From Ylistrum balloti (taxonomy: Eukaryota), in assembly GCF_031769215.1 (NCBI RefSeq), contig NW_026782889.1:1-64000 (forward strand): a stretch of 64,000 bases of DNA, in the 5' to 3' direction. The translations under genes and the position numbers were made by a program. Shown piece after piece: positions 16,155-51,574 of this stretch; positions within the stretch are counted from its first letter, which is position 1, and each line of letters opens with the position of its first letter. The notes below the pieces were generated by a model, which saw nothing but the letters and a program-made list of their open reading frames with translations, did no database searches and had not been told where the DNA came from.

Positions 16155-18011
16155 CCATGACTCCAATAGGAAACCAGCAGCAAAAGTCTGTCGCCACCAC
16201 CAAGAAGAGGGTTTTAGCTACCGTCAGGTCTCGTTGTCGAGTCTGTGATGAAGCTACCCGACCCCCACCACTTGTTACAAGGCTTTTAAACATGCAGAGT
16301 TGGCCTATGGCGATGATAACGAAAATGAAACTGTTCAGGCAAACAAACACTGCAAAAGAATAACCCGAACCAGGTTGTTCGTCACGTGTCAGTGGTAAGG
16401 CAAGACACACTCCTGACTGAGAATAATATTCTCCCTTGAAGTAGAATTGCATAGAAACAACAGGGATGACAGCGATTGTGATAGCAACCAACCACAGGAA
16501 AAATGAGATGATGCATGCTTGCTTCCCGGATATATTTCGCCGAGAAAGACGAGACATGGGAAATACTATGACAATTACTCTGTCTATTGTCACCATAAGA
16601 ATCAGAAACGTCGACATTTCACTAGATATATTCGACAGGATTCCAGCTATGGTACATACAATATTGTTTCTCCAATCCTGATCATTCCACGCATATACAT
16701 CTCGATAATGTATATCAAATGATCCTATAATCATGAGATAGATACTCATGAGAAAATCAGACATACTTAAATTCAATACAAAAATCGAATAACTTGTTGT
16801 AATATTATCTCTATCGATAAGAAGTCGGTAAAACATGACAGTAAAATTCCCAATTAAAGAGCAAAAGCCAATAATCCAGAGAAAAACTCTAAGTAAATCT
16901 GAACCTATCAAATTTTTACACGAGGATATCACATCTCCTTCTGATTTGCAGGCTGCTTCTTCAAACCAGCAATGCATTAATTTAGATGGATCCTTTAGAC
17001 ACTTATCGTCAGGAACCGACTTAGGTTTAACACAACACATAAAAGGAGTGTCTGTCAGCAAAACAGTCAGATTGTCTAAACCTTCAAACATGTGTTGCTT
17101 AACTTCCAGTTTGTTACCAATGATATTCAAAGTAGACAAATAACTAGAATTAGTGAATGTACCCGCAGGCAAAGTTGCAAAATTATTGTATGATATATCG
17201 AGCAATTCAATAGAAGCAGGTAGGATAGGTAGAACAGATAAGAAATTTCCGTTAATTGTGATTACTTTGATATTAAAAAAAACAGTGAACGAATAGTCAG
17301 AAAGGGACAGTATCCGATTGTTGTCGAGGAGCAGGTATATAAGGTATTGAAGCTCATTAAAAAGGTTATCAAGTAGAACTGATATCTGATTGTTCGATAA
17401 GTCCAAATACATAAGATCAGGGAGACCGCTAAACACAGAGTCTGGTAGAACTGATATCTGATTTCTAGATAAGTTCAAATACGCAAGATTAGTGAGACCG
17501 CTAAACACAGCGTCTGGTAGAACTGATATTTGATTGTTAGATAAGTCCAAATACCTAAGAAAAGGAAGACCGTAAAATGTATTTATCGATAACTGATTTA
17601 TCTTATTATTACATAACTCTAGATGTTCAATACCTGACATGTCGCTGAACATGCCTTCAGGAAGTAACATAATGCCGTTATTAGATAGATCTAATGACCT
17701 GAGGTTCTGTAAACCTTTGCTGAATGTTTTGTACACATTGTATTTATCTTTAATGACTAAATAACTGATCTTCGATAGTCCCAGAGATAGTAAATGATTC
17801 CACATGGTATTGGAAGGGAAGTGTATAGTCGCCAAGAAAGGGTCGCTTAAGTTGACTGTGAGACCAATACACATACAAATTGGTTGGCACGGATGGACAC
17901 ATGCAGACTCGTCATCGGAATCTGGACATTGGATTTTATTGTCACATACTTGTTGTAGAGGAATGGTGTGTCCGTTAGGGCAGTGATGTATTCCTGCACA
18001 ATTGAATAGTC
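16155..18011 (-). CDS. LGR type-C GPCR copy 1, exon 2 (most of LDLa, LRRNT, about 10 LRRs, hinge, TM1-TM6)
   Basis: ORF track 16147..17874 shows LxxLxLxxN repeats, hinge TDTPFMCC...SSCKNLI, TIDRVIVIVFP and TDFCCWFP. The frame extends upstream to acceptor tttcag (18014-18012) and adds GLFNCAGIHHCPNGHTIPLQQVCDNKIQCPDSDDESAC (LDLa). Donor G|gtaaat at 16155/16154. Confidence 0.93.
17375..17590 (-). repeat. 72-bp LRR-encoding tandem repeat inside copy 1 exon 2
   Basis: Three near-identical 24-codon units containing ...gtagaactgatat(c/t)tgatt...gataagt(c/t)caaatac... Confidence 0.85.
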
Positions 18012-19959
18012 CTGAAACAAGGACGATTTAATGTACTTGCATACAAAATCAATAATCGACGACGATACCGATGATCTGTTGGAAATATACAACAAAGTAT
18101 AAACCCTTTACACTACAGACATATACTTAATATCAAGAAAGTTTGATATTCAACCTAGTAAGCAGTACGTCTTCATTAGCAATAGTATGCGTCAATTACT
18201 GTATTTAGTGAGAAGGCAACTGATAATGTACACATGACGTCATGTTTGTCTATTTTTAGACGTCTGATTATTTTCATGTTAATGAAATTGAAAGAAATCG
18301 AAATATTTTAGAGTATGATTTATGTTTTCACAGTGAAATAATCATCTCTCACACCTACCACAGTTGTTGTTTTCTGTTTCCTGTTTCTGGCATCGAATGT
18401 CACATTTGTAGCTGACGTGCTGACAGAACGTATAAGGACACTTGACCTTCTCAGTAAAGCTATGTCCTTCTCTTCCTAATGTAAAGATGTGAAATGAAGT
18501 TATTGTACTCGATGATTTAACAGGAATAAAACTCTGATTTCACGTAAATTAATGTCGAATGAAAGAATTAAAACGAAGAATCATCAATCTAATAAGAATC
18601 GATAATCGATCAAAAATCTGCGATGATCGATGCCTTTCACAAATAGTACGTTTATATAGAGACATGTTTGTTTATAACTTCTGAGATATATTCCCACGCT
18701 CAGGATTCTTGGTGCGAGTAGCATTGAAACGCCGAATAAATATCGTGATTCATCTTCCTCTACTCGAAGTAAATTTTAGGACGTGTCTACTTGAGGTTTT
18801 GACATAATCTAAAATGTTGGCAACGTATAAGCACGATCATTTTGTGGACGGAGTGATATAGTTTTACTATCGCATTCAATTGATCAATCAAGCGTTTTAT
18901 TCCATATCGAATTATTAGGAAGTAAATATTGCTAATGTTTTTCTTCATATTCAATAATAACAATGTCGTTTTGTAATGTTCTTGTTTTAAAAGGAGAAAA
19001 CGAGTTTCTTTTTCTTTTTGATATACTTTTTTATTTTCATCTTTACAAACATTCGTGATACTAATTGAAAAAAAAATATATATATGAAAGCGTACAATTT
19101 TTTTAGAGTGAAGTCACTTATTGCTCTTATATAAACACAATTAAAGGACAAAGAACATGATTTCCCAACTAATATGACGTAATGATAGTTGTAAATCACG
19201 AGACTCCACCCCTCACTACACCTACGTGACTGACCAACGAGATACGCCAACCAATAACTGATTCTTCTTAATATGCATTTTGAGTGGACGATAACGAGGC
19301 TGATTGACTTGCTACCTTACTGGTGCTCTCCTGTCGATATTCGGCCACTATAATGCTAGTACATAAAGTCATGGATCTGAAAAAAAAAATCTTGTTCTAT
19401 TCAAATTTCTTCAAATATTCAATAGATTTTTCATTCATTACTAAATCATTAAGATTGATTTTTTGATATTTGTAAATAAAAATATTAAAAAGCTTAAGGA
19501 TAAAACTACAGGTGTAAAATAGCGGTTTACACAGACCATGTTAACGAAAGAATTTTTTTTAATCATCTTATCCCAGCAAACAATAATGCACAGAATAGTT
19601 TATAGTAAATGTTGTCAACAGTTCAGAGTGTATTGATCGGTTGGTGTATTTGACTTAGCAGATGTGCCGTAAATGCGGAACGTGCAGATAAAGAGTTTTC
19701 TACTGCAAAAAGTCAACACCAATGGTCATATATAATATTTACCGTATTATTATTATAAGAAAAGGAAAACTATTTTCAGTTCCCCCATTTCTGTGAATGT
19801 TTTAAAATTTCAGGTAACTAACATAGAATGTGAACAAATTACAAAGAGACTTATGAAAAAGTGAAAGGAGATTAAGACCAAGTGTTACGGAAGAGTAAAT
19901 GTCTTCTGCTTAATCGACGTCTTCCGTCATGTAAACCTATGTCAATCCAAGTAAGTAAT

Positions 19960-20345
19960 GTCACATTCTCAAATGATAGCGATTTATACAACCACGGAAC
20001 CAACAGGAAAAATTAAAAGCTCCACAACAACAAAAGAGATCGTAGTTTTTTCGATTGGGTCACAATGTGGATCATAAACCTTCTCCGTAGTTTTCATCAA
20101 TCTGCATCTTTTAAAAACCCTGTGTTACGAGATTGTCCGTCCGTTGAAGACGTCTTGATCAAAGCAAAAAGCAAAAACGTGATAATTGGATCATGCCTTT
20201 GAATATTGAATTAACTGTGACATGTAAATACCATGGGTTGGGGATGCAGGTACAGTGCTATCCAGAAATAGAAAGTTCACAATAGTGAAATTCAAATCAT
20301 TAAGCATACAGCTTGGTGAAGTCTTCAAATGTATGAACATATCAA
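19960..20345 (-). mobile_element. Penelope-like RT relic in LGR copy 1 intron 1
   Basis: Reads NDLNFTIVNFLFLDSTVPASPTHGIYMSQLIQYSKA*SNY..., resembling the DDFNFxIVNFPFLxSNIPxxPAYGVYISQLIRYxRAC motif recalled for molluscan PLE RTs. Contains stops and frameshifts. Confidence 0.55.
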
Positions 20346-22560
20346 AGATACATAAATACCTATCTCCACTTGAAAGATTCGTATTGACAACTTCTGTGGA
20401 AGCTATTGTCACATGCCAATGCCTCTCCACGATGTCCGTCGTTTTATCGATCTACTTTTGTAAACAACTACCTTTACCATTCAGAGAAAGACGTTAAGAA
20501 TTTCAGGTATTGCACGAATAATCAATATACTCTAATATTTAGACAGATTATCCATGCAGTGTAGCCTACATCCTGACCCGCATCTATTAAACACTAGAAT
20601 GGAAAGTAGGCGGAGCCTCTACGTCATCAATGGTTGAAGGGAGCGATTTGATTGACTAAACACGTGTGAGGGACCGTTTCGAACAGAAATACAAAGATAA
20701 TTAAAACAAGAATTCGCATGACATTGCATAATCAACAGCCCGGTGACAAAATCAGGGTATTAGCTATATTCACCCGATAACATTCTGTTAGAACAAAAAA
20801 GACGATAAGTTAATAAAAATGTCAACGCTCAACAATATTCATTATGACACTTTCCTGTGTATATGGAGTGTGTTTAATATGTCAATTTTGACAATACAGT
20901 TGACGTCATCAATCCATGAATAAAGTCAACATTTTTTCTGTTCCTTATGTTCTTGTCACGAGTATAATTTATTATGAAAAACACAAATTATAAAAAGTCA
21001 GGCGGCTCTCTTTTTTTTATCATTCCAAGTATCGAATCATATGTTGCCAAGCAGAGACAGTTGAAATCATGTCATGGTTTAGTTTTATACTGAAGCATCT
21101 TTCTCACCTTTTGAAAACAACCTTTTTGGTGACTATGCGGTTTTGAGATCCTAATATCAAAGTGAAAATCTGGGCAATTCTCTGTTATTCCAACATAATT
21201 TTATTTAAAAAAGGATTTGTTGTAAAAATTATAGGCACGGCAATTACGTAAATGTGATTTTATGCAGAAGCATTATTCGTTAAAGTATGTTTTCTTTTGA
21301 ACATATTCGGACACCTGTATCTAAAAACAATCAAAGCTTAAATAAATGAAAAAGTGGAATAGTTCTCCTCAATTTTAAAGTTACATTTTAAAACTTTTTT
21401 TTTTCAAAATGCTACCAAGAACAAAATGCGAAAATTTACTTAGAAGTTTCAACCCCCAGGGACCGTATTCTTGAAGGATTTGAAGAAATTTCAGTAAGAT
21501 ATTGCGTTATTTAATATTTCAAATTTATTCTTTTCTCCTTAAAGTGGTATTTATAGCAATTGAAAGAAAGTGTAGTTGAATCTAGATTTCACGCGTGAGC
21601 ATGAGAATATTTTCATCTATCCTGGCCCTAACTTTGATGTAATTTGAAATTTATGATACAATAGAATTTAATCCTTTCTCGTGTTGGCTAATTAAACCGT
21701 ACAAAATATATATTGTGTTTCTTCTTTTCCGCTGATCTCATCAACATCTGTATCCATTGTTCAACACTAAACAATCCAGCAAAATAACGAATAGAAAAAC
21801 ATATTATTTTTCATACATTTAAAGCAGGTATCAAATTAACGACATAAAAATGCATATACTACAATACTGTTCAATATGATTCTAGAATGTAATGCACGAG
21901 TATATATGTGTTAAAGTATCGTGAGCACGACTGCTAGATAAAATTGCACATTTTGTGCAGTTTAGTAAATATAGTTGACTAGTATAACGGAATAAACATT
22001 TAACGGAAGACATGTGTAGTTATAACAAAATAACGATCACACGAATATTACAACTAATTGGTTATAAACACAACACATAAGATTTACCTAGTATTTAGTA
22101 TATTATTTTGTTTACAATAATATAGAAGTAATGAAAATAAAATGACCTTTGTAGCGGTAAGAGATTCATTGCCGAGACAAAAGGAGATGTCCATTTAATG
22201 TTTACATATATCATGTATATATAATGAGTGTCCTTACACTAAAGCTGGTCCAGTTTTTCTGCATCGTGCGCAAATCGCACATCTTGTTACGTTGTGTGAT
22301 ACCACAACTGTATAAGTGCACTTTAGAAATAATACTTTTATAATACCAACATATAGAAATGTCACTTTACATTAGTCTGTGTGATAAGTGAACTGATTGG
22401 CTGAACCAGCAGTTCTAAAGCCATATATAGCTCATACAATTACCTGGTTCTTTGTAATACTAGTTTCACTTATAAATTGATGCCGTATATACTTAAATAG
22501 CCATGAGATAATTGTTCACCTTTCTTTAGGATACCATCGCTTAACCTTTGATAATATTAC

Positions 22561-22798
22561 CTTTTGTACATTCCTGTGCTGGCAGTGGCTCCGTCTGGTC
22601 TACAGAACGTTTTCTTCTGATGTTTTCGATGGCGTCAGCATGTGTCGAAAGTCTTTCATCAAACATTTTATTCTTTCCATGGCTGAGGTCCCGAACAAAA
22701 TTCTGCCTCTCGCCTAAGTGTTTCATTGAGTATGCGCCATGGTTTAATGCACAAATGATTGCAATAAAATATGGCACCAAAAGCTTGAAAACGTTCAT
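22561..22798 (-). CDS. LGR type-C GPCR copy 1, exon 1 (signal peptide, pro-region with RRKR, first LDLa Cys)
   Basis: MNVFKLLVPYFIAIICALNHGAYS is signal-peptide-like. Donor aaag|gtaata at 22561/22560 is phase 1 and matches the exon 2 acceptor. The join completes a six-Cys LDLa (ECTKGLFNC...). Total CDS is 238+1857+143=2238 nt. The splice join is inferred, with no transcript evidence. Confidence 0.8.
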
Positions 22799-23094
22799 AG
22801 TGAAGTACTCTTAATCATAAATGTAGCCTTGATGGAGTTAAATGAGTTAAAACAGTTTATGCTAAAACGCATGTAAACATGTAACAGACGAAGATATCAG
22901 CGTCCTGTATAGGGTACCATTGCAATGGTCACGTACTGTTAGCAACGTCCCGGGCGTTTGCTTTTAAACATATCAATGATTAATATCTAAGCATATTCGC
23001 CAGAAATGATGAATATTAATTTGGTTCATTTGACATATTAAAGCCATTAGCTTATTTTGATAAAAATATATAATCTGTCTACAAAGCAATTGGA

Positions 23095-23225
23095 TGGTTT
23101 GAAGCGCGCAGATTGTCCTATTGTTGGTGGAAACTGGAGTACCTGCGGAAGACCCACGTGGACGAGCAGGTCATCATATACAATTTTCACGTCCGCTCTG
23201 GGATAATCGAACATGTTAATAAGGA
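23095..23225 (-). mobile_element. Degenerate tRNA-derived SINE-like fragment (paralogue at 49965-50095)
   Basis: ggtggaaac(t/c)ggagtacctgcggaagacccac resembles a common invertebrate SINE core. The minus strand has a B-box-like GTTCGATT. Confidence 0.45.
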
Positions 23226-23953
23226 CACATATCAATAGGTAATCAAAGCTTATTTCATAAGGAATGTAAAAAGATTAGTTGAAAAAAAAAATAAATAAAG
23301 ATAATAATAATGATGTGCTGTTATTTACCTTAACAAGGTAACAAAGTACTTGATAAAAAAACGTCTATCAAGAATGATAAGTAAGAAAAGTGATAGGACA
23401 GATGAAAATTATAAAACCATACGTCAGTCATTACGTAAAAGGGTAAAACAGGCGTAAGTGCTCGTTTCATTACATTCCAGTTCAGTTGTTGTCGGGACTT
23501 ATGTTTCCAACATACACTTGTAATGACGATACTTGCACAATGCGTGCACAATAGAATAATTGGACGAAATTTGTTATAACATAGAGTACATGTTAGTCCG
23601 CACAGTGTGGCGACCTATCATACATCTTGTTGAAATAGATTAAGAAATGACCTGTGAACACTCGTGGTGTAGGGTTTATCTATTTTCGTGGTATATAAGA
23701 GTAAAACTATGTATATATTCCTAAGCCATATATCTATAGGTTAGACACATGTAGATCTATCACGTAAATACTAGTTATATACACTCGTATTTAAGAATAG
23801 TTTGTTTACACGTGACCAGTCTTAGTATACTGTCATGCATATCGTATAAGCATTATCAATGTTAGCACTACATGAACGTCTATTTTCGTTTCGGAAATTA
23901 ATAATCCAAAATCCCATATGTCAGATAGGAAATTTTTATTTTCATTACTCTCA

Positions 23954-24200
23954 TTTTTATATACCCGTCGAAAGACGGACGTATTATGGTATGGCGCTGT
24001 CCGTCCGTCCGTCTGGCGTCTGTCGTAAACTTTTATTTGTCCGGAGATCTCCTCCTCAATTTTTCAGCCGATCTTTATGAAACTTGGTAGGCTTAATCAC
24101 CATATGAAGTTGTGTTTTCCTGACCGGGGTGATTTGAACAAGAGTTATGGTCCTTTGTTTATTTCCTTATAGAAATCTTGTCCGGAGAAGATCTCCTCTG
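23954..24200 (+). mobile_element. Helentron-associated non-autonomous element (HINE/DINE-1/pearl-like), partial
   Basis: Starts in a T-run (tttttatatacccgtc), with hairpin CCGTC-GAAA-GACGG, a (GTCC)n microsatellite and then the core tcagccgatctttatgaaacttggtagg. Confidence 0.65.
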
Positions 24201-25606
24201 TTAACTCATGTAAGAAATAAGGTTCGTTCATGAGATTTAAACTGATGATATTGCCGATGTCAATTGTTCTTATACATTTGTAGATATAAGTTAAATAAAT
24301 TCGAGACAAACTTGCACTGTTTCCTAATCTCTATTCATATTCAATATTGTTGCTCATGGCAAGGTTCCAATCAGAAAAAAAATCTAACAGATTAATTTTC
24401 GATTCGTTAGCGTTTCTGGTCATAACCATCTGGTTGTGGACTTAATAACTTAATGTTACAATGTATAATTTATGAACTTATAGGAGACATAGGAATCAGA
24501 ATACTGTCAAATAGACACTTTGTTATAAGATACCACGTTGTTAGACAAACTTGTGTTACGTTTACGAAATGTCAAAATATCTTGTTTTCTAAAATAAATA
24601 GAAAGAAATTATCTAGTGATTAATCATATCGAATAGTCCAGTTGTCTGAAACCTTTCATGTGTTGTGATTCGATATCAAACGATAGAAGAGGGCTTGTAA
24701 AATGTTGTTTGAAATATAAGTTAAATGATATATTAACACAGACGTATTCCATATTGGAGTCGATTGCTGACGGTGATGACAGCTACCTGCTCTGAACGTT
24801 TTACTCTGCTGTCAGAAAGTTTTTCTTTTCATGCTCATTTGTTTGAAGTACGTGGCATCGTTTTCACATACTTTACAATAAAATGCCATTCCGATCTGTG
24901 CATTTAATGTAAACCTCCGTTTGCATCTATAGTTATTTCGTCACCCATACAGATATTTCTGCTTAACGCCATCTAACAGTATTATATCAATAATCAAACA
25001 TTAATTGATGATCATTTTGTTCCACCCATAAACGAAGTGATAATTTTGAATCGCGAACACAATGTACACACGGAACCAACAGGCAAACTAATGAGCAACA
25101 AACATGTATAGTTTCATATTTGATGAAGAAGAAGAAAAAATCTCAATGCGATCACTATGAATATCTTAAAACTTCACCGTAATTTTCATCAACCTGCATC
25201 TATTGAATTTCTGTGTTTTGAGTTTTGTCGTCAGTTGACGATTTCTTGCTCGCAAATTGTGATCATGGAAATAAGCATTTAAATCTTTTTGTTTTCTGAT
25301 GGTATACAATTTTAGTGGATTCATTGCCGAAGAGAAAACAACCTCCATTTATTGTTCACATATAATATATATAATGATTATCTATACACTATGACTGGTC
25401 ACACTTGACGCTTTGTATACAAACTACAGTTATTGTTGAGTGTATATATATATTCTGTACCTATTACATATCTATGTTTCTGAACTATGATTTTATGGCT
25501 TTATTAAACTTATCTGTATTCCAGAAAAAATGCATGATTTACATAGTTCTTTTCAAGAGATAACAATCAGAAAATGATAGAAATCCAAATACAAGATGGC
25601 TGATTG

Positions 25607-26040: not shown

Positions 26041-27049
26041 TCGACTTGGTAAAAGTGTAAATTTGTGAGAACGGAACTTAGAATCTAACTTTGTAAAGTC
26101 AAGAATCTTTTTCAGTCTGATTGTGTAGAGTTACGTTTCTCTAAGTAACTAAATTATTGAGGTCAAGAGCCAAATGGCTGGCGGTCTATTTACCCACAGA
26201 TAATTAGTATTCAGACATAATATCAGTTTGTAAAATTTGAATAACAACGACTGGTCGTCGGTGGAACCAAAGGCGTTTACTACTCAGGAACAGCGCCTCA
26301 CCACAAGTGTATATGATCCTCCTTGTTTGGTCCACATATATTTTAGGTTTTATCAAAATCTAGTTTGAATTGATTTGTCAACATGTTGCATATTCTTTAT
26401 TGTTTTGTTTCACTACACGAACGGTTTTGCGGGTGGACCGTTTAGTCCCCGTTCTTACTGAGTAACATTTTAAATTGCTTGTTGAAGATAAAAAATGTAG
26501 ACATAATGAATCGGCAGCCAGTATGGAAATCACTGCTTAGCGAAATACATGGTTACAGGATTAATATTGTGCTCACTGAGCGTTCAAATGATGTAATATT
26601 TGCATGTTTCGTTAAAAAAAAAAAATTAATGCAAGATTCGGACTCCTCGGCACCACTACAATCATTTTGGTGATTGCCTTTGTTCAATCTCTCCTACTAC
26701 CTTGAAATCCTTAGTTAGGTTGTGGATAATATTGGATTAGTGCTATGTGATTATATACGTTGATGGTGTAGAAAATAAATATTGTTACCAACATTTTAAA
26801 TTCTCTGATCATTCTATACTGATGAGGAGTGTTCGCGTCCTGGAACTGAAAAATCAACATACAAAAAAGATATCAGTATTGGTAGTTATGAATAGATAAC
26901 CAATGCATTCATATAAATGAAATGTTGTTAGAATTAATGTTGTATTAAATGTTAAAATGTTATCATTACCAATTATGCCCTAATAACAAATACATTGATG
27001 CATATGATAACAAACAAGATTTTAATATTATAACGCAGATAACGTATAT

Positions 27050-33320: not shown

Positions 33321-33329
33321 CTTCTCTTT

Positions 33330-33880: not shown

Positions 33881-33949
33881 TGATCCTCCTACAACGACAC
33901 AACTATTCCTTAATATAGTGTTAGCACAAATAATTTGTCCTACTTGTAT

Positions 33950-35075
33950 CTAATATTCTGAAGTATAACTAGAATGCCATGGAGGTGGTCGTCGGGTACG
34001 TGTTTGCCTGGTGTTGCTCTCTAACCCTTTCTGACTGAATCACTGCCAATCACAGCATTCGCCACCTCTAAAGCAACATCATCCATCACACTCTCATTCT
34101 TTTTCCTAGATGACGCAGCATGCTCCTCTTTCAAATAACTGAAACAATTTTCGTCGGCCTGTGTTTGTCGATCTGTCAACCCCTGGCTTCTTTAGTATCT
34201 TCCCCATCCATGGCCTGGCCCACTTGTAACTTCATACGGTCTGCATGGATGACTTGTGCCTTCCCCTTGCGTCCACAACACACTCGGTAAGTGACGTCTG
34301 TCAACTTCGCTAGCAGCTTGAACGGTCCTTTTCACCGACTTACTAACTTGTGACTTCGTCCTAACTTCACATTGGGAAAGAACACAAAAACTTCATTGCC
34401 TGGTTTGAAGTTCTGCCAGGACAGCTTGGAGTCATGAGTCTTCTTTTGCCTCAACATGGCCCCTTTCACATGCTGTCTTACCATATGATGGGCTTTTTCC
34501 ATCTTCTCTTTTAGCTGCCATGCCCACACATTTTGGGGTATAACTTTGACATCACGAGGCATGGAATACGTAATATCCAATGGCGTGCTGGTCTCCCGGC
34601 CCAACATCATGAGGTTTGGAGTGTTGGCCGTTGTCTCATGTTCTGCTGACCTGTAAGCCATGGTCACATATGGTAGATTTAGGTCCCAGTCAGTTTGTTG
34701 ATCATTGACAAAATCTTTTAACATGTTAACCAGGGTCTTGTTAAATCGTTCGACCATGCCATTCGACTTTGGGTGGTAGGGGGTCGTCCGCGTTTTCTTG
34801 ATATCTAACAACTTGCACACTTCCTGAAAAAGAGCACTTCAAATTGGGAACCCTGGTCTGAGTAAAGGTAGCTTGGTACACCAAACCTACAAATCACTTT
34901 CCCAACTAGAAATCTGGCAACAGTCTGCTTCAACCAGTTGCATTGGTGCTCTCTTCGCTTAGACAGGAGACTTCACTCGACAACACTTTACACACCCGGC
35001 TACATACCGCTTGATATCTGCTTTGAGTCCTGGCCAGTAAAACTCTTGCCTAATCTTTGCTCGAGTTTTCTTCAT
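33950..35075 (-). mobile_element. Degenerate Ty3/Gypsy integrase
   Basis: FYWPGLKADIKRYVAGCVKC (zinc-binding region), RFGVP..SDQGSQFE, TTPYHPKSNGMVERFNKTL (rve core), then *KGPF...IHADRMK and a terminal RTRRPPPWHSSY. Contains stops, frameshifts and an internal deletion. Confidence 0.92.
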
Positions 35076-35109
35076 TCCCAAATGGCCAGCTGTCTTATTG
35101 TCATGTAAA

Positions 35110-35281
35110 TGAGAAAGAACTGTCCTTCGTTCTGTTATTAGTTATGTCTAACATAACAATGTTTGGGTCAAGGGAGCACTTATTCAGTGACTTCTATCTT
35201 CCCAAACTACAGCCGGTCACATACACACTACTTGCGGTACTAGTGTATTGTTGATGTTGATACACCAAGCTCCACAATAGT
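35110..35281 (-). mobile_element. Remnant of the second Gypsy LTR, left of the LINE insertion; continues at 38738-38840
   Basis: Direct repeat of 32780-32920 ending ccacaatagt. The continuation agttctc...gcaacttgctggttttcgag follows the LINE. Confidence 0.75.
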
Positions 35282-38200
35282 CGTGACGTTTTGACGTCAC
35301 TTCCTGGGTACAGTCGGAGTTTTTCTGCGCTCCGACAATCAACTTACTTAATCAAGCGTGTAAAATCAGTTGTAATGGAAATCGGGACAACTTTTTCAAA
35401 TTTGGCTGGTGTCTTGAGCAACTTGAGCTAGAGAAGAACAAGATATAGATCAGGATACGATGGGCGAAACCAAGGAGAAAGACAACAAACATGGTGCCAC
35501 GTCACCAAGGGAGTCAACAGGCAAAACACAGGCAACGCGATCGTCTAGTAGGAGCGACATACAAGGCAGCAGAAGCAGGTACAAGGAAAATGAATCATCT
35601 TTCCAATTGAATTGGAATTGTGATGATGTACATGATAACCGGTATGAATGTTTTGTGTGTAAAGCGGAAGTTTCGATGAGTTCGAAACTTTTAGAATGCG
35701 GACGCTGCAAAGAACGATTTTGCATAAAAAGCCTGAAAATCAAGGACAATGAATATAAAATCTTAAGTCGAACCGACTTCATGGTGTTTTGTATAGAATG
35801 CCGGCCTTATGTAGAAAAAAGCATATTCGGTCGACAGAACGATAGAACAGAAATGCAACGAAATATTCAAGGAATTTAGGGAACGAGTCACAGAAATAGA
35901 GAAGTTGTCTTGTCAGCAAATGTGACGAAAAAAGAGTACGTGAGATAGTGAAAGAGGAGCTAGGTCAGGAGAATGTCCGGGTTACAGATACAATGGAAGG
36001 GAAGAAGGAAAGGACTCGTACACTTAATACTGTTATGTCCGAAATATCGGAAAGGAAAAACAGAGAGAGAAATATTGTTGTTTACGGTATTCCGGATCAA
36101 ACAAGTACATCTGGTCAAGAGAGGAAGGAAATGGATTTAGAGAAAATACGGAAACTATTCTTGGCATGCGATTTGGAACTGGAGGAAACGGAAATCCTTC
36201 AATCTCAAGACTAGGAAAGTACAAATAAACAGAAAGTGCTGAAGCATCAAAGAGACCCATGCTAGTCGTTTTTTAATCCGAGCAAATAAAGCGGGACCTA
36301 TTCCGCAGTATTAGCAATCTATCACAGCAACTAGGTGTCGGGTACAGATAAACTTAATTTACTGGATCTTGTATTAACAAATGAGGAAAACATGGTTACA
36401 AATATAGATCATCAGAGTCCACTAGGAGAAAGTGACCACTGTGTACTTTTCTTTCAATTCGAATGTTACTCCACAACAAAGAAACCATCACGACCTAAGA
36501 GAGTATATGATAAAGCCAATTTCTCAAAAATTAACAAGGAAATAGGAGAATTTGATTGGAAAAATCACTTTAAACCAAACGATGTTAATAACAGTTGGAA
36601 AATATTTTACAACAAAATTAGGGAGGTTGAGGAAAAGTATGTACCGGTGAAAATACCAAAACCAACACATGCGAAACATGATTACCCAATCAACAGTGAA
36701 ATAAAAGAAATCATCAGGAGGAAACATTCTCTTGGAAAGAAAGCAATAAACGGTGGCGAGTATGCTAGGAAAGAATACTTCAGAATAAGAAACAAAGTAA
36801 GGGAAATCACGAGAAAATTAAGAAAACAAATTCGAAGACAAATTATCATCAGAGGATAAACAAAATCCAAAGGCTATTTGGAGATATATCAGATCGAAGT
36901 CGAAAAGTAAAGCTGAAATTGAAGATTTGTATACAGAATCTGGTAATAAACAATCACATAAAGAACAAAATGATAAGGTTAAGGCAAATATATTAAATTC
37001 TTATTTTAAAAGTGTGTTTGTTACAGAACCGGACGCAGAAATGGAAATCCCTACTCTTTCTTCTAAAAAAACACGTTATCCGATGTATTCAATAATAGTA
37101 GACAGGGACTCCGTTTTTAAGGAACTTCTAAAGTTAAAAGTCGACAAATCGCCAGGAATTGATAGGTTACATCCACTGTTTCTTAAGAAAATTGCAGAAG
37201 CAATCGCGGCGCCATTAGCAATTTTGTTCTCGATCTCCTTGAGGACCAGCACAAATCCAAATGAGTGGAAAAGGACACAAATAACAGCAATCTTTAAGAA
37301 GGGGACAAATGCAAACCAGGGAATTGCAGACCTGTGAGCTTAACTTCAAATGTGTGCAAAGTACTTGACTCTTTAATAACAAGTCACATCACTGATTATA
37401 TGAAACAGAACTATTTTTTTCTCAAAGAAACAGTTCGGATTCATGCCTGGCAGGTCTACGTCACTGCAACTACTGAAAGTTTTGGATGAGTAGACTGATC
37501 ATATGGATAATGGACACTCAATCGATTGTATCTATATGGATTTTCAAAAAGCATTTGGTACAGTGCCACACAAAAGACTTTTTGGTAAAATGGAGTGATA
37601 TGGAATCAGCGAGGAGATCGTAAAATGGACGGCGAGTTTCATTTCAAACAGGAAGCAAAGAGTCTCGTTAAATGATCAACACTCGAACTGGAGCGATGTG
37701 TCTTCGGGAGTTCCCCTGAGTTCCCCAGTGTTTGGACCTACACTGTTCGTCATATTTATTAATTTCTTGCCGGAAACAATACAGTCTGAAGCATATCTTT
37801 TCGCAGCCGACACTAAATTGTCCAGAAGCATAAAAGAAAATACCGATGTGAATGTACTTCAAGATGATATGGATCGCCTTTCAGCTTGAAGTGAAAAATG
37901 GTTATTGCAATTTCATCCTAAAAAATGTAAATTTTTGCGCATTGGCAGGCAAAGTGGAGACAGAAAATATTATTTAAACAACGAAGAATTAAAGGAAGTC
38001 TATCAAGAAAAAGATATAGGAGTAATTGTAGACAATTCTTTATCATTTGATGAACACATAAGTACACAGGTCAAAAAAGCAAACTCTATGTTTGCAATAA
38101 TAATGAGAACGTTTCAATTTCTCAATGGACATAACTTCCCATTACTGTACAAAACAATAGTAAGGGTTCATCTGGAACATTCTTTTACTGTATGGCATCC

Positions 38201-38737
38201 ATATAAAGTCAAACATATAGACATGATCGAGGCAGTGCAACGGATAGCAACAAAACAATTATCAGGATTTAAGGAACTAACTTATTCGGAAACACTGAAA
38301 CGCCTAAAATTACCAACATTGGCATTCAGGAGGATTCATGGGGATATGATTAAAGTCTTCAAAATTACGAACAATTTTTGCGATAGTAACGCTGCTGATT
38401 TCCTTAAATTGTGGATCGACAAAGGGGTCACTCCAAAAAACTTTACATGCGCTACTGTAAACTTGACATCAGGAAACATTCTTTTGTTTTGCGTGTGGTC
38501 AAAATATGGAATAATCTTCCGGAGTATATTGTATCGGCATCAACCGTTAACTCTTTCAAAAATAGATTAGATGAACACTTGGCAAATCAAGAACTGGTTT
38601 ATAATTATAAAGCAGAAATTCTGTAGTTCCTGGATCTGACGTCTCAAATGAGAATAATTATAATCGTTATCATTATATCACTGACACCGGTATAGAGGAT
38701 CGTAACGATCCTGCACTGGTAATAAACTAAACTAAAC
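35282..38737 (+). mobile_element. CR1-clade LINE, degenerate, with both ends apparently present and an internal deletion of most of the endonuclease
   Basis: ORF1 relic has a PHD-like CxxC...CxxC...CxxC and RERNIVVYGIPD. ORF2 relic has LDLVLTNEE...LGESDH, KSPGIDRLHP, QFGFMPGRST, YMDFQKAF, SGVP...GPTLF and FAADTKL. 3' (TAAAC)n tail, with AGT duplicated at 35279-35281 and 38738-38740. Confidence 0.92.
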
Positions 38738-40121: not shown

Positions 40122-42912
40122 ATTGCTTCTTTCTAGGCTTATACGCATGCGCAGCATCAGGGCTACGAGCAGTAATGTATGAATTTGATCAAGACCACAC
40201 TGTTTACATTCTTTAACATTATAGTCGCTTTAGTTTTTGTTGTTTACGGATACACATTATATATACATTATACATGTAAACATTAAATTGACGTCTCTTT
40301 ACGTCACAGCAGATAAATCATCTAAAATCTTTCACCGATCAGCAAGGAAACTTTATTTTCATTTCTTCTATTTTACTCTCATTTTTTCATTCATATTGTA
40401 AACAAAAATATCTGCTCAAGGAAATGTTAAGTGTTGTGTCTGTAAGCCAGGCGACCCAGTTTGTAAAGATCAGGACCTGTCACGTATGTACCCGTATACA
40501 GGTAAACGTTTGCTACCCGAGGCAACACTACTCAACACAGTCTGAGGTGTGAAACTATATACGATCAGACTAATAAATGCAGGTCAAGCGTTATTTAAAA
40601 AAAATGTCGAATTAAAAAACCTGATTGATTGTATTGTGTGCGTGTGCGCGCATGATCTCCGGACTATGTGCGTAGGAAGTTTTGATACTATATGTATATT
40701 CATTTCTAAGTACATTTTAATTAAAAAAAAACAAACAAAATGGCCACCATGAAGTCATATCCGTTTTTATCTAAATTGCTATAAACTTCATAACGACACG
40801 TCATGTTGAATTCAGCTGTAAAAATGTTTTGTAAAATAATAAAGAACAGAAAAACATATTTATTATTCACCTAGAACTTCCGACACATGGCACAGCCATT
40901 GATGAACATGCTAGAGTGGATAATAATCTACAGAGACTAGAGTCTTCATATTTGATATATAAGAAGCTCAGGTCATCGGTTTTTAAGTTTATAAATATAA
41001 ATGTGATATTTGGTCCGATGCATATAGAGACCAATGGACATCGATAGTAATAAGGAAACGAATAGTGCAATATCAACTTTGGTTAACATTCAGAAATGCA
41101 ATTTTGAATAACAAAAACTTCTCACGAACTACAGGATATGGTATTTGATAAGTAAAACGTCCATGTATTTGTGTATGAAACTTGATAACATGAATAATTT
41201 TCCTCCCCCCTGCCAAGTCACAAATCATGAAATGGATTCTTATCAATAACAAAGAGAAACAATGTGGCGTTATTTGTTCAGTTGCATACTGCGACCAATT
41301 GCTATCAACAATAGTACGAAAAACATTGTGCTTGGTCAACTTCAATTCTTCTATTTAGGTCAATATTCAAAAGTGTTTTTTATGTTATCAAATATTGAAG
41401 AACTTCTCAAGATACTCATTGTCTAAAATGTTGATATTTCACATGTTAGATGTCCAGGTCATTAGATATCAGGTTGACTAATATGAATGACTTTAATTTC
41501 AAGGTCACATGGATCAAGTTTGTAAAATCTCAATGGTTTATTTTCAATAACCAAAAGGTACAAGATGATGGTATTTGGTCAGTTGTATATTGCAATCAAA
41601 TAATAATGATGGTTGTGAACAAATAAAATGTCAAAGGTCAACTTCTGGTTTTCAGAAAGGGTCACATTTAGAATCGTTTAGCGCAAATCCATCATCTGAA
41701 ATTGCACAGTCTAGAGTCTGGGTGTTATATAAATCACTTGAGTGGTTGGTCATCACGTTTGTGGAAATAATTCAACTTAGGGTAAGAGGTCGAATATAGG
41801 TGAAAACTGCGTCAAATTGTTGGCTCATCATTTCTAGTTGACTTTGAATTATGATGATGGCATGTTGGCATTTTCTTTTTATTTAGAATACATCAAGTGT
41901 TTATTCTCTGTTTTGTTTTTTAATCCGCTTTCTTACTTTTATAGGAAACTGTTGAATACTTGAATACATCATTCATTCATTTGATGTTCTAATTAATACC
42001 CCCAATTATTGTATCGTGCGTCACCGTGCCCTAATATACTGTTATTTATAAATACTTATTACAGCTTAACTCGGAATGATAATGCCATTGATAACTACCC
42101 TGATGACAATTGTTAAAAAAGGAAGTTTTGTAGAAAGTATTTAGCATAGAATGAGGGAATGATTCTTGCAGACATGTTGATCAAAGACACTCTAATTAAA
42201 TGTTGATTTGTGTCACGGTTTTGTGTTTAGACTGTTGATCCTTGAAACTAGTGGAATCGACATAAGGAAGAAATTCATCTTACGAATTAAAATAACATCT
42301 GTGTGTTGTCGAATTAATTATTACACAACAACACAGGAAGGATTTTAAACAGAGTGTTACGTTGTTTTTTTGTAAGAATCAGTACAACATTTTTGGATGA
42401 AGGTTTGACTTGTTTTGCATTTACGTCTAAACGATAGACAATCTTGACGTCATAAAAACGTGTGCATTAATGTTTAGCTTCTTGAACTACTTCCAACAGT
42501 GATGAAAAAAAGTGCTTTTTCCCCCAAATGTTTTAGGGAAAACATGACAACAATTTGGTCCTTTAGATAGGTTTTAATGGTATAAAATTCTTGTCTAGGA
42601 AAGCGAATCATTATCTGGTTGAAACAAATAAAAGCAAGTGTAAAAATCTTGTTTGGCAAACACAAATATCCTTTTGATCCCGTTATATCAATTTGAAAAC
42701 TGACAGCTCAGGCGAGATACCCAATAATTAACAAATTTGGAATAAACGATGACGAAAATTGATGATACTGATAATATCTAACATTATGAAATCATCAAAT
42801 ATTCTTTTTAATTATCATAGTTCGTTTATCAGTTGTCAAGACCTATCTTATTATCAATAATCTTTTGTACGGACAAAAGTCTTCACGGCTATCACACATG
42901 CACACGTGGTAA

Positions 42913-43055
42913 TCAACGTACTCTATGACGCTTCCTCCAAATTGCTGATGCCGTGTATAAGAAAGGGTTGATGGCGGCATTGACTGGCAGCACAAATACC
43001 ATTACCCAGGCATAGGCATCATTCGGAATCTCGTATCCACTTTTTGACATCACAC
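42913..43055 (-). CDS. LGR type-C GPCR copy 2, exon 3
   Basis: Same sequence as 15590-15732. Acceptor cag at 43058-43056, TGA at 42915-42913. Confidence 0.9.
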
Positions 43056-43477
43056 CTGAAAAAATAGTATTGTTTGACACTTATCTTGAGTATTCATCCT
43101 ACATTAGGACAACTGATGGTATACATCGAATAGAAGTTTTATTATCAATTAATGATATTAATTATATGTGGTAATTCCTGATCTAAGCATGAAATCTTTA
43201 GTTTTCGTACTTACGGAACCATCGTCTTTCACGACTTCCGCGAGTCACTCAAACTCTTATATGACCATTTGTTTATGTGTGTTATTTCTGGTTACTTTAT
43301 ACAGATGCACTTTTGTCGGAATGTGTGTATATAACAATATATCTAAATTCTTATAAAAGTGACCTGATGGTCGTCGTCAATGACGTTTGGTTTATTGCTG
43401 GAAAGAAACTCAATTGAGAACGTTATAATTCAAAGCTTTGTTCTACATTTCGTAATGCGATAAGATAAGTTATTTAC

Positions 43478-45343
43478 CCATGACTCCAATAGGAAACCAG
43501 CAGCAAAAGTCTGTCGCCACCACCAAGAAGAGGGTTTTAGCTACCGTCAGGTCTCGTTGTCGAGTCTGTGATGAAGCTACCCGACCCCCACCACTTGTTA
43601 CAAGGCTTTTAAACATGCAGAGTTGGCCTATGGCGATGATAACGAAAATGAAACTGTTCAGGCAAACAAACACTGCAAAAGAATAACCCGAACCAGGTTG
43701 TTCGTCACGTGTCAGTGGTAAGGCAAGACACACTCCTGACTGAGAATAATATTCTCCCTTGAAGTAGAATTGCATAGAAACAACAGGGATGACAGCGATT
43801 GTGATAGCAACCAACCACAGGAAAAATGAGATGATGCATGCTTGCTTCCCGGATATATTTCGCCGAGAAAGACGAGACATAGGAAATACTATGACAATTA
43901 CTCTGTCTATTGTCACCATAAGAATCAGAAACGTCGACATTTCACTAGATATATTCGACAGGATTCCAGCTATGGTACATACAATATTGTTTCTCCAATC
44001 CTGATCATTCCACGCATATACATCTCGATAATGTATATCAAATGATCCTATAATCATGAGATAGATACTCATGAGAAAATCAGACATACTTAAATTCAAT
44101 ACAAAAATCGAATAACTTGTTGTAATATTATCTCTATCGATAAGAAGTCGGTAAAACATGACAGTAAAATTCCCAATTAAAGAGCAAAAGCCAATAATCC
44201 AGAGAAAAACTCTAAGTAAATCTGAACCTATCAAATTTTTACACGAGGATATCACATCTCCTTCTGATTTGCAGGCTGCTTCTTCAAACCAGCAATGCAT
44301 TAATTTAGATGGATCCTTTAGACACTTATCGTCAGGAACCGACTTAGGTTTAACACAACACATAAAAGGAGTGTCTGTCAGCAAAACAGTCAGATTGTCT
44401 AAACCTTCAAACATGTGTTGCTTAACTTCCAGTTTGTTACCAATGATATTCAAAGTATATAAAATACTAGAATTAGTGAATGTACCCGCAGGCAAAGTTG
44501 CAAAATTATTGTATGATATATCGAGCATTTCAACAGAAGGAGGTAACATAGGTAGAACAGATAAGAAATTTCCGTTAAGTATAATTATCCTTATATTAAA
44601 AAAACCAGTAAATGAATAGTCAGAAAGGGACAGTATCCGATCGTTTCCGAGGGACAGGTACATAAGGTATTGAAGCTCATTAAACAGGTTATCAAGTAGA
44701 ACTGATATCTGATTGTTAGATAAGTCCAAATACATAAGATCAGGGAGACCGCTAAACACAGAGTCTGGTAGAACTGATATCTGATTTCTAGATAAGTCCA
44801 AATGTTCAAGAACAGGGAGACCACTAAACACAGAATCAGGTAGAACTGATATATGATTACTAGATAAGTTCAAATACACAAGATCAGTGAGACCATGAAA
44901 TGTATCTATTGATAACTGATTTATCTTATTATATGATAAATCTAGATGTACAATACTTGGCATGTCACCGAACATGCCTTCAGGAAGTAACACAATGCCG
45001 TTATTAGATAGATTTAATGACCTGAGGCTTTGTAAACCTTTGCTGAATGTTTTGTACACATTGTATTTATCTTTAATGACTAAATAAGTAATCTTCGATA
45101 GTTGTTGTAATTCCGGAGATAGTAAATGGTTCCACGTGGTTTTGGAAGGGAAGCGTGCAGTCGCCAAGAAAGGGTCGCTGAAGTTGACTGTGAGACCAAT
45201 ACACATACAAATTGGTTGGCACGGATGGACACATGCAGACTCGTCATCGGAATCTGGACATTGGATTTTATTGTCACATACTTGTTGTAGAGGAATGGTG
45301 TGTCCGTTAGGGCAGTGATGTATTCCTGCACAATTGTATAGTC
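43478..45343 (-). CDS. LGR type-C GPCR copy 2, exon 2 (LDLa, LRRs, hinge, TM1-TM6)
   Basis: ORF track 43470..45206, extended to acceptor tttcag at 45346-45344, which gives GLYNCAGIHHCPNG... Donor G|gtaaat at 43478. Confidence 0.93.
44698..44915 (-). repeat. 72-bp LRR-encoding tandem repeat inside copy 2 exon 2
   Basis: Same 72-bp period as in copy 1. Confidence 0.85.
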
Positions 45344-51010: not shown

Positions 51011-51019
51011 TTTTAATTA

Positions 51020-51565: not shown

Positions 51566-51574
51566 GACAGATCC

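What the first reader, a model, noticed from the sequence alone, without database searches (positions are those of the whole stretch)
16155..45343. Paired LDLa-LRR-GPCRs with a hypervariable LRR ligand face on an invariant signalling module
Seen: from the LRRNT to the last LRR (about 250 aa) I count 47 amino-acid substitutions and a 3-aa indel between the copies. The following about 325 aa of exon 2 and all of exon 3 show no amino-acid change, and the exon 2 part of LDLa differs only by F/Y. Many changes fall on the x positions of LxxLxLxxN: IEHLELCNN/IVHLDLSYN, LRYLDLSNN/LVYLNLSSN, LAYLNLSRN/LEHLDLSRN, LIYLLLDNN/LMYLSLGND, IKVITINGN/IRIIILNGN, LSTLNIIGN/LYTLNIIGN. In the stretches aligned by codon (17130-17340), most changes are non-synonymous. 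Established: those x positions form the concave ligand-binding sheet, and in RXFP1 the LRRs bind ligand while LDLa/linker and 7TM drive activation. Diversification of this face is typical of immune LRR receptors such as lamprey VLRs and plant NLRs, rather than of conserved hormone receptors. Inference: this may be a diversifying recognition system (immune, allorecognition, gamete or chemosensory) wired to a constant GPCR output.
Basis: partly seen in the sequence, partly recalled or inferred. Interest (0 to 1): 0.85.

Follow-up and report, generated by a model that had tools for sequence, protein, structure and literature searches.

The report
Scallop LRR-GPCR twins, half-homogenised
Two neighbouring scallop genes for an orphan leucine-rich-repeat G-protein-coupled receptor are identical in their signalling half because that half was recently copied from one gene to the other, while the ligand-binding repeats keep older differences that evolve at about the neutral rate. 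This pattern is known from other receptor families and does not prove an immune-type hypervariable system.

Summary
Two intact tandem 745-aa GRL101-like (type C LGR) genes of Ylistrum balloti differ by 47 substitutions and a 3-aa indel in the LRR block. They show no amino-acid change in the hinge, 7TM or exon 3.

- **The "invariant signalling module" is not evidence of constraint.** Silent sites there are identical too (dS 0.005). The identical tract (16030-17135, one difference) runs 125 bp into intron 2. Intron 1 differs by 6.3%. This is recent gene conversion (permutation P<1e-5).
- **A second near-identical tract** covers the LDLa and the exon 2 acceptor, so the LRR block is a 700-bp island of divergence.
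- **"Hypervariable" overstates the LRR result.** dN/dS is 0.57-0.67 overall and 0.42-0.47 at scaffold positions. At concave-face x positions it is 1.0-1.6, never significantly above 1.
- **Site-model tests are mixed** (p = 0.005, 0.09, 0.03) and confounded by exchange between paralogues, which I demonstrated.
- **LRR silent divergence** is about twice that of the adjacent intron, so the LRR lineages are older or imported.
- **Expression could not be tested.** Only DNA runs were available.

The closest precedent is TLR1/6 and avian TLR2A/B. Tandem GRL101 expansions in molluscs are already published. Modest interest.

The parts
15590..22798 (-). Copy A: a GRL101-like type C LGR gene of 3 exons (22798-22561, 18011-16155, 15732-15590) encoding 745 aa. 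Parts in order: signal peptide, pro-region, LDLa-like module, LRRNT, 11 LRRs, Cys-rich hinge, 7TM.
   Evidence: The gene model was built from tblastn of Y. balloti paralogue proteins and from splice sites. Pfam finds LRR_8 at 2e-61 and 7tm_1 at 1e-20. The public model P0001 is this gene with part of the LRR spliced out and the N-terminus missing.
42913..49665 (-). Copy B: the tandem paralogue with the same 3-exon structure (49665-49437, 45343-43478, 43055-42913). It encodes 745 aa with an intact ORF. No protein model for it was found in the searched protein collection.
   Evidence: Searches give the model. The best database protein for its LRR is P0002, from another contig, at 77% identity.
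12927..24782 (.). Segmental duplication unit 1. It pairs with 40242-51570 at an offset of about 27.3 kb and about 94% identity, with patchy divergence of 0-16% per 200 bp.
   Evidence: Self-blastn and a sliding-window alignment.
40242..51570 (.). Segmental duplication unit 2, the partner of 12927-24782.
16030..17135 (-). Main gene-conversion tract in A, matching B 43353-44458. It spans 1,105 bp with one difference, at 16558. It covers the last 125 bp of intron 2, the 7TM, the hinge and the last two LRRs.
   Evidence: P(<=1 difference | 6.25%) = 7e-29. GENECONV-style permutation: 0 of 100,000.
17135..17835 (-). LRR island of divergence in A, matching B about 44458-45167. Nucleotide divergence is 9.8%, dS 0.15 and dN 0.096. 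It holds all 47 amino-acid differences and the 9-nt indel.
17835..18034 (-). Second near-identical tract, matching B 45167-45366, with 2 differences in 200 bp. It covers the LDLa-like module and LRRNT start, the exon 2 acceptor and 23 bp of intron 1.
   Evidence: LDLa dS is 0.
15492..15804 (-). A further identical tract (312 bp) covering exon 3 and both of its flanks. A 4.9% divergent patch of intron 2 (15804-16030) separates it from the main tract.
17563..17652 (-). Patch in LRR2-3 where copy A groups with paralogue D and copy B with paralogue C (5 AD|BC sites against 2 AB|CD). This is a trace of exchange with other family members.
   Evidence: Quartet site counts.

Best explanation
The window is the first 64 kb of a Ylistrum balloti (saucer scallop) contig. 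It carries two tandem, intact copies of a lineage-expanded orphan receptor of the GRL101 / relaxin-receptor-like (type C LGR) kind. Each copy has a signal peptide, one LDLa-like module, 11 LRRs, a Cys-rich hinge and a rhodopsin-type 7TM.

The contrast between a variable LRR and an invariant rest is produced mainly by partial interlocus gene conversion. Recent conversion tracts have overwritten the hinge, 7TM, part of intron 2, exon 3 and the 3' flank. A second tract covers the LDLa and the exon 2 acceptor. The 700-bp LRR block between them was not converted.

The LRR block therefore shows older divergence. Its scaffold residues are under purifying selection. Its solvent-exposed concave-face residues change at about the neutral rate. 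It also carries traces of cassette exchange with other paralogues.

**Shown:** gene structure, domain content, conversion tracts, substitution rates and mosaic ancestry. **Inferred:** both proteins fold and signal alike through G proteins but present different ligand-binding surfaces, including different predicted N-glycan sites on the concave face. The LRR escapes homogenisation either because its divergence and internal repetition block heteroduplex formation, or because selection favours keeping the two surfaces different.
For: **Identity of the locus.**
- Best hits are Y. balloti GRL101-like proteins. The locus fetched for P0001 has the same coordinates as the window.
- The best solved-structure match to the 7TM is RXFP1, 7tmw_R, at 2.5e-56.

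**Gene conversion.**
- Hinge plus 7TM dS is 0.005 (1 silent difference in 214 silent sites) against LRR dS 0.149.
- The identical tract 16030-17135 crosses the exon 2/intron 2 border. Divergence is 6.25% in intron 1 and 6.5% in the 5' flank.
- Silent sites of the 3' half differ from intron 1 at P=8e-6. Permutation gives P<1e-5.
- Regions disagree on ancestry. In the last 1.5 kb of intron 1, A-B is 0.071, A-C 0.069 and B-C 0.083. In intron 2 and the 3' flank, A-B is 0.02-0.03 and A-C 0.12-0.13.

**Ordinary constraint on the 7TM.** Omega is 0.20 by ML and 0.24-0.30 among A-D. The M1a/M2a LRT on the 7TM is 0.

**LRR rates.**
- Omega is 0.57-0.67 overall and 0.42-0.47 at scaffold positions. At x sites it is 1.17-1.57, with p=0.14-0.67 against 1.
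- Polarised counts are 23N:8S on the A branch and 15N:5S on the B branch. The neutral expectation is 3.5:1.

**Exchange and precedent.**
- There is an AD|BC patch in LRR2-3. LRR number varies among paralogues C, E and F.
- In TLR1/6 and avian TLR2A/B, conversion homogenises the N- and C-terminal parts and leaves the central LRRs divergent (PMC3125219).
Against: - LRR silent divergence (13.5% of silent sites) is 2.3 times that of intron 1 (P=4e-4). 'Conversion of the 3' part alone' therefore does not explain everything.
- M2a beats M1a on unambiguous columns for six paralogues (LRT 10.8, p=0.005, omega2 2.5 for 22% of sites, 8 of 13 top sites at x positions). It also does so for A, B and D (p=0.03).
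- The island is bounded on both sides by converted tracts. Three of the 47 changes toggle N-x-S sequons at position 5 of the beta-strands. Both features would fit selection for different binding surfaces.
- No RNA data were available, so function of either copy is unproven.
Confidence: 0.7

Rival explanations
1. One reading: the pair belongs to a diversifying recognition repertoire (immune, chemosensory, gamete or allorecognition). Positive or diversifying selection drives the concave LRR face and actively opposes homogenisation. A constant GPCR output is kept uniform by conversion.
For: - Variable residues are 5.4-fold enriched at concave x positions.
- Point estimates of omega at x sites are at or above 1 in nearly all comparisons (1.0-1.9; one of ten pairs, C-E, gave 0.74).
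- M2a beats M1a at p=0.005 and p=0.03 in two of three sets.
- The LRR island lies between two converted tracts, and its dS is about twice the intron's.
- N-glycan sequons on the concave face differ: A has N259, B has N187 and N235.
- At least 6 close paralogues vary in LRR number.
- Many variant contigs appear in four DNA runs.
- In the literature, GRL101 clusters are linked to chemosensory organs in apple snails (PMC6573481). They are also linked to a schistosome-resistance region in Biomphalaria (PMC12297450).
Against: - No test shows omega above 1 at x sites (p>=0.057 pairwise; 0.14-0.67 by ML).
- Whole-LRR omega is 0.57-0.67.
- The A-D set gives p=0.09.
- Site-model LRTs are known to give false positives under recombination, which is present here.
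- The E/F pair of the same family shows almost no LRR substitution (dN 0.007-0.015).
- Paralogue D carries a frameshift in the LRR, which suggests relaxed constraint.
- There are no expression data.
Confidence: 0.2
2. The LRR island is imported. The two genes were almost fully homogenised or recently duplicated. One copy then received its LRR cassettes by ectopic conversion or unequal exchange from another family member, which brought in older divergence at silent and replacement sites together.
For: - In LRR1-4, A-B dS (0.20) is as large as A-C (0.18), A-D (0.15) and B-C (0.18). That is a star pattern, whereas the 7TM gives (A,B) against C and D.
- There is an AD|BC patch at 17563-17652.
- B shares many states with C and D where A differs.
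- LRR dS exceeds intron divergence.
- An earlier scan note had suggested 72-bp cassette shuffling.
Against: - Across exon 2, AB|CD sites still dominate (50 against 9). No fetched paralogue is a close donor for the whole island.
- Intron 1 also carries 6% divergence, so the genes were not recently identical throughout.
Confidence: 0.07
3. Assembly artefact. The two copies are divergent haplotypes wrongly placed in tandem, or short-read polishing erased real differences in the most similar stretches.
For: - The assembly is fragmented (contig of 111 kb).
- Exact identity over 0.5-kb runs alternates with divergent patches.
- Copy B has no matching protein model in the searched protein collection.
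Against: - The 27-kb units differ in their intergenic content. One has a retroelement insertion at about 32-38.6 kb. Satellite arrays differ in length and are 74-88% identical. A third partial unit starts at 51.0 kb.
- Paralogues on other contigs show the same regional pattern.
- Contigs of four other DNA runs carry A-like pieces at 99% or more, and also the alternative letters found in B.
Confidence: 0.03

Closest known systems
Type C LGRs: vertebrate relaxin receptors RXFP1/RXFP2 and Lymnaea GRL101
   Same: They share the N-terminal LDLa-type module, about 10 LRRs, a Cys-rich hinge and a rhodopsin-type 7TM. RXFP1 (7tmw_R) is the best solved-structure match for the 7TM at 2.5e-56. Public names of the closest proteins are 'GRL101-like' and 'relaxin receptor 2-like'. 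CWxP (CWFP) and NPxxY (NPFLY) are present in the sequence.
   Different: The LDLa is divergent and below Pfam's threshold (19 bits against a cut-off of 24.1). Lymnaea GRL101 is noted for its N-terminal LDL and LRR repeats (PMC12297450). From my own knowledge, it has about 12 LDLa modules, against one here. The family is locally expanded, with at least 6 close paralogues in this species, and it is an orphan. No relaxin-like ligand is implied.
Partial gene conversion between tandem LRR receptor paralogues: mammalian TLR1/TLR6 and avian TLR2A/TLR2B (PMC3125219)
   Same: Conversion homogenises the signalling end. In avian TLR2A/B it also homogenises the N-terminal end. The central ligand-binding LRRs stay divergent. 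Tracts can extend into non-coding sequence. The paper itself proposes that conversion limits divergence of critical regions while the ligand-binding domain diversifies.
   Different: Here the output module is a 7TM GPCR rather than a TIR domain, and the host is a bivalve. The tract is very young (dS 0.005). Ligands are unknown.
Tandem GRL101-like expansions in molluscs: apple snails (PMC6573481) and the Biomphalaria sudanica SudRes2 cluster (PMC12297450)
   Same: These are lineage-specific tandem clusters of LRR-GPCRs. They are proposed as environmental or chemosensory receptors (29-132 genes, expressed in tentacles), or lie in a hyperdiverse region associated with parasite resistance.
   Different: The scallop genes lack the C-type lectin domain of the SudRes2 genes. 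No expression or association data exist for them. Those papers did not describe domain-restricted gene conversion in the passages I read.
Hypervariable LRR immune receptors: lamprey VLRs and plant NLR/RLP xxLxLxx sites
   Same: Variation concentrates on the exposed residues of the LRR beta-strands.
   Different: There is no somatic assembly. Omega at those sites is statistically indistinguishable from 1. Only two to six close copies were compared.

Membership tests
Type C LGR (GRL101 / relaxin-receptor-like GPCR) | Rhodopsin-type 7TM related to the LGR/RXFP 7TM | tested here: met
   PF00001 matches at E=1e-20. RXFP1 7tmw_R matches query residues 345-617 at E=2.5e-56, followed by LGR4, LHCGR, FSHR and TSHR. 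CWFP and NPFLY motifs are present in the translation.
Type C LGR (GRL101 / relaxin-receptor-like GPCR) | Extracellular LRR domain of about 10 repeats between the LRRNT and a Cys-rich hinge | tested here: met
   PF13855 matches at 2e-61 for A and 8e-43 for B. The AF2 model shows 11 regularly spaced strands with pLDDT above 90.
Type C LGR (GRL101 / relaxin-receptor-like GPCR) | N-terminal LDL-receptor class A module | tested here: inconclusive
   PF00057 gives E=0.0016 and 19 bits, below the curated cut-off of 24.1. Six cysteines and the C-x-D-x-S-D-(D)-E motif are visible. The AF2 model is of low confidence there, with pLDDT below 60.
Type C LGR (GRL101 / relaxin-receptor-like GPCR) | Activation by a relaxin or insulin-like peptide | not testable with these tools
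   No ligand information is available.
Interlocus gene conversion between tandem paralogues (TLR1/6-type) | Identity at silent and non-coding sites within the tract, far below background divergence | tested here: met
   dS is 0.005 in 366 codons. The tract runs 125 bp into intron 2. Background divergence is 6.25%. P=7e-29 and P=8e-6.
Interlocus gene conversion between tandem paralogues (TLR1/6-type) | Tract significant by permutation of polymorphic sites (GENECONV logic) | tested here: met
   The longest run of polymorphic sites with A equal to B is 48. The maximum in 100,000 permutations is 43.
Interlocus gene conversion between tandem paralogues (TLR1/6-type) | Different genealogies inside and outside the tract | tested here: met
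   In intron 1, A-B is 0.071 and A-C 0.069. In intron 2 and the 3' flank, A-B is 0.02-0.03 against A-C 0.12-0.13.
Diversifying (immune-type) hypervariable LRR receptor | dN/dS significantly above 1 on the concave face | tested here: not met
   Omega at x sites is 1.57 (p=0.14), 1.17 (p=0.67) and 1.50 (p=0.41) by ML. Pairwise values are 0.74-1.9, with p>=0.057.
Diversifying (immune-type) hypervariable LRR receptor | A site class with omega above 1 supported by site models | tested here: inconclusive
   M1a/M2a LRT is 10.8 (p=0.005) for six paralogues, 4.8 (p=0.09) for A-D and 7.0 (p=0.03) for A, B and D. Using all columns gives LRT 51, but that set includes non-orthologous repeats. Recombination is present. 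These are my own ML implementation, not PAML. The 7TM control behaves as expected.
Diversifying (immune-type) hypervariable LRR receptor | Expression in immune or sensory cells, or induction by challenge | not testable with these tools
   The five runs found are DNA, since their contigs contain the introns. No RNA run was served.

The most novel reading that the evidence does not exclude
In scallops, the GRL101-like cluster may be a germline-encoded recognition repertoire. Selection would keep the concave LRR faces of neighbouring paralogues different, including by moving N-glycan sites along the beta-sheet. Recurrent gene conversion would keep the LDLa and 7TM activation machinery uniform. 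That would be a GPCR counterpart of the TLR1/6/2 arrangement, used for chemosensory or immune discrimination.
Probability: 0.2. Interest if true: 0.6.

Novelty: new member of a known kind. Interest (0 to 1): 0.33.

Why it matters
The locus is a clean example of how partial gene conversion can imitate a 'constant module plus hypervariable module' design. An amino-acid comparison alone would over-read it, and the silent sites and introns settle the question.

It also adds a bivalve case, with a GPCR output, to the pattern known from TLR1/6 and TLR2A/B. It marks a small scallop GRL101-like family as a reasonable candidate for expression and ligand studies. Related mollusc clusters have been linked to chemosensation and to parasite resistance.

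As it stands, it does not open a new kind of system.

Tried and rejected
- **Purifying selection as the cause of the invariant half.** Rejected: silent sites and intron sequence are identical too.
- **RNA evidence.** Both run searches returned only DNA-like runs. Laying four of them showed contigs that contain the introns and no exon 2-exon 3 joint, so expression stays untested. The contigs are short (about 200-400 bp) and come from many paralogues. I did not use them for copy number or allele frequencies.
- **M1a/M2a on all ectodomain columns.** It gave LRT 51. I discount this result because many top sites lie in columns where only E and F are present, or where C's repeats are not orthologous.
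- **E/F as a replicate pair.** They differ mainly in LRR number, not in substitutions, so they do not reproduce the pattern.
- **Search for an annotated protein of copy B.** None was found.
- **Mapping variable sites in 3D.** The structure tool returns no coordinates. I used only the strand register of the model.
- **Scan-notes search by words.** It returned nothing.

PAML and HyPhy were not available, so the codon models are my own implementation.

Full report
**What is there**

The window is AT-rich animal DNA. A self-comparison shows a tandem segmental duplication, 12927-24782 against 40242-51570, with an offset of about 27.3 kb and about 94% identity. Satellite arrays flank it, and a retroelement-rich insertion lies between the units.

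Each unit carries one long minus-strand ORF with LRR_8 and 7tm_1 domains. The closest proteins are 'GRL101-like' and 'relaxin receptor 2-like' proteins of scallops, led by Ylistrum balloti. The locus fetched for P0001 has the same coordinates as the window. The window is therefore the first 64 kb of contig JAUZWB010000931.1 of GCA_031769215.1.

With paralogue proteins and splice sites I built two complete three-exon genes of 745 aa each.
- Copy A: 22798-22561, 18011-16155, 15732-15590.
- Copy B: 49665-49437, 45343-43478, 43055-42913.

Each encodes a signal peptide, a short pro-region, one LDLa-like module, an LRRNT, 11 LRRs, a Cys-rich hinge and a 7TM with CWFP and NPFLY. The LDLa-like module has six Cys and a DSDDE motif, but Pfam gives only 19 bits against a cut-off of 24.1. 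The best solved-structure match of the 7TM is RXFP1. An AlphaFold2 model of the ectodomain is confident in the LRR part. It puts a strand at positions 3-5 of every repeat, which fixes the register used below.

**Check of the observation**

It is exact.
- LRRNT to last LRR: 47 substitutions and a 3-aa indel.
- Next 320 codons of exon 2 and the 46 of exon 3: no amino-acid change.
- LDLa part: only F/Y.
- Positions 2, 3, 5, 7 and 8 of the repeats: 20 of 50 residues changed, against 20 of 183 other LRR residues (P=8e-6).

**Why the signalling half is invariant**

The cause is not constraint. The hinge and 7TM differ at one silent site in 214 (dS 0.005), while the LRR has dS 0.149.

At the DNA level, the stretch 16030-17135 has a single difference and includes the last 125 bp of intron 2. 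Exon 3 with both flanks (15492-15804) is identical. A 4.9% divergent patch of intron 2 lies between these two tracts. Long stretches of the 3' flank are nearly identical as well.

By contrast, intron 1 differs by 6.25%, exon 1 by 4.4% and the 5' flank by 6.5%. The chance of one difference or fewer in 1,105 bp at the intron rate is 7e-29. A GENECONV-style permutation gives P<1e-5.

Genealogies also disagree between regions. In the last 1.5 kb of intron 1, copies A and B and paralogue C from another contig are equidistant (0.069-0.083). In intron 2 and the 3' flank, A-B is 0.02-0.03 and A-C is 0.12-0.13.

Against paralogues C-F, the same 7TM evolves at an ordinary omega of about 0.2-0.3. A site-model control finds no positive selection there.

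The conclusion is recent, patchy interlocus gene conversion. A second near-identical tract (17835-18034) covers the LDLa and the exon 2 acceptor. The LRR block (17135-17835) is thus a 700-bp island between two homogenised tracts.

**How the LRR evolves**

*Pairwise estimates (Nei-Gojobori).* dN is 0.096, dS is 0.149 and omega is 0.64.

*Paralogues used.* I fetched four close paralogues: C (L001), D (L002, with a frameshift in the LRR), and E and F (L003 and L004, head to head). I aligned them by codon.

*Maximum-likelihood codon models.* These are my own implementation. The one-ratio estimates of omega are:

| Partition | Omega | Test against 1 |
|---|---|---|
| Whole LRR | 0.57 | p=2e-5 |
| Ectodomain | 0.67 | p=8e-4 |
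| LRR scaffold positions | 0.42-0.47 | clearly below 1 |
| Concave x positions | 1.57, 1.17, 1.50 (three sets) | p=0.14, 0.67, 0.41 |

*Polarised changes.* With C and D as outgroups, the A branch has 23 non-synonymous and 8 synonymous changes. The B branch has 15 and 5. The neutral expectation is 3.5:1.

*Site models (M1a against M2a).*
- Unambiguous columns, six sequences: p=0.005, with omega2 2.5 for 22% of sites and 8 of 13 top sites at x positions.
- A-D only: p=0.09.
- A, B and D: p=0.03.
- All ectodomain columns: LRT 51, but this set includes non-orthologous repeats.

Such tests are unreliable under recombination, and recombination is present. In LRR2-3 (17563-17652), A groups with D and B with C. 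LRR number also differs among C, E and F.

The exposed face is therefore free to change and may be weakly diversifying, but 'hypervariable' is not demonstrated.

**An unexplained excess**

LRR silent divergence is 2.3 times that of intron 1 (P=4e-4). In LRR1-4 the four paralogues A-D are about equally distant (dS 0.15-0.24). Their 7TM dS is 0.09-0.11. The LRR lineages are therefore older than the rest of the genes. There are three possible reasons:
- everything except the LRR is repeatedly homogenised across the family;
- cassettes are imported from other members;
- repeat-to-repeat conversion within a gene inflates both dS and dN.

Selection against homogenisation would produce the same picture, so I leave it as a live minority reading.

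One detail fits functional divergence. Three D/N changes at position 5 of the strands toggle N-x-S sequons. A has a predicted glycan site at N259 (LRR4). B has them at N187 and N235 (LRR1 and LRR3).

**Expression and population data**

Only five runs were found, and all are DNA. Their contigs include the introns, and no exon 2-exon 3 joint was seen. They hold A-like pieces at 99% or more, together with many more divergent pieces. About half of the best-supported alternative letters are those of copy B. This supports a real multi-copy family but says nothing about transcription. Copy B has no protein model in the searched protein collection.

**Comparison with what is known**

*Membership.* These genes belong to the type C LGR / GRL101-like family. 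That holds for the 7TM and the LRRs, and is inconclusive for the LDLa.

*Mechanism of the pattern.* It is the same as in mammalian TLR1/TLR6 and avian TLR2A/TLR2B. There, conversion homogenises the terminal and signalling parts and spares the central ligand-binding LRRs (PMC3125219).

*Published GRL101 expansions.* Tandem expansions are reported in apple snails, with expression in tentacles (PMC6573481). A GRL101-like cluster lies in a schistosome-resistance region of Biomphalaria sudanica (PMC12297450). The idea of GRL101-type receptors as environmental or immune sensors is therefore already in print.

**Verdict**

The best explanation is tandem GRL101-like paralogues shaped by partial gene conversion, with an unconverted LRR island that evolves nearly neutrally at exposed sites (confidence 0.7). 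True diversifying selection remains possible (about 0.2). This is a new member of a known kind, of modest interest.

Noticed in passing
window 22561-22798 and 49437-49665 (exon 1 of A and B): The pro-region before the LDLa ends in a dibasic, furin-like motif in copy A (…ENIRRKR|SV…). Copy B has …ENIKRKCSV… and a 3-aa deletion. The N-terminal processing of the two receptors may therefore differ. This agrees with the earlier scan note s1-258973.
   Followed up: partly
window exon 2: A codons N259; B codons N187 and N235: D/N changes at LRR position 5 toggle N-x-S sequons on the concave beta-strands. The two copies therefore have non-overlapping predicted N-glycan sites on the putative ligand face.
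   Followed up: partly
L002:9605-11625 (paralogue D, contig JAUZWB010000397.1): Paralogue D needs a frameshift inside the LRR region to be read through. It also has two small in-frame deletions in the 7TM. The public model P0004 avoids the frameshift by starting late and skipping part of the LRR. D is probably a pseudogene, or the assembly has an error there.
   Followed up: partly
L003 and L004 (contig JAUZWB010000226.1): Paralogues E and F lie head to head about 20 kb apart. They are nearly identical in sequence (7TM dS 0.024), but E has more LRR units than F. This points to gain or loss of 72-bp repeat units.
   Followed up: partly
window 17670-16102 versus P0001: The public protein model for copy A (P0001, 504 aa) lacks the signal peptide, the LDLa and the first LRRs. 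It also splices out 49 residues of LRR5-7. The ORF in the window is continuous there, so the model looks like an annotation artefact.
   Followed up: partly
window 32000-38600: A GC-richer block (43% against 33-35%) lies between the two duplication units. It holds retroelement-like ORFs on both strands, including a sub-threshold integrase-core match at 34332-34820 (rve_3, E=2.8e-5). The block is absent from the corresponding place of the other unit.
   Followed up: partly
window 7723-8419, 27048-28650, 51583-54317, 58980-61113, 61765-63999: Large satellite arrays with periods of 20, 20, 32 (16), 62 and 86 (258) bp. The 20-bp array occurs downstream of both gene copies with very different lengths. 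A third partial copy of the unit's upstream element starts at about 51.0 kb.
   Followed up: no
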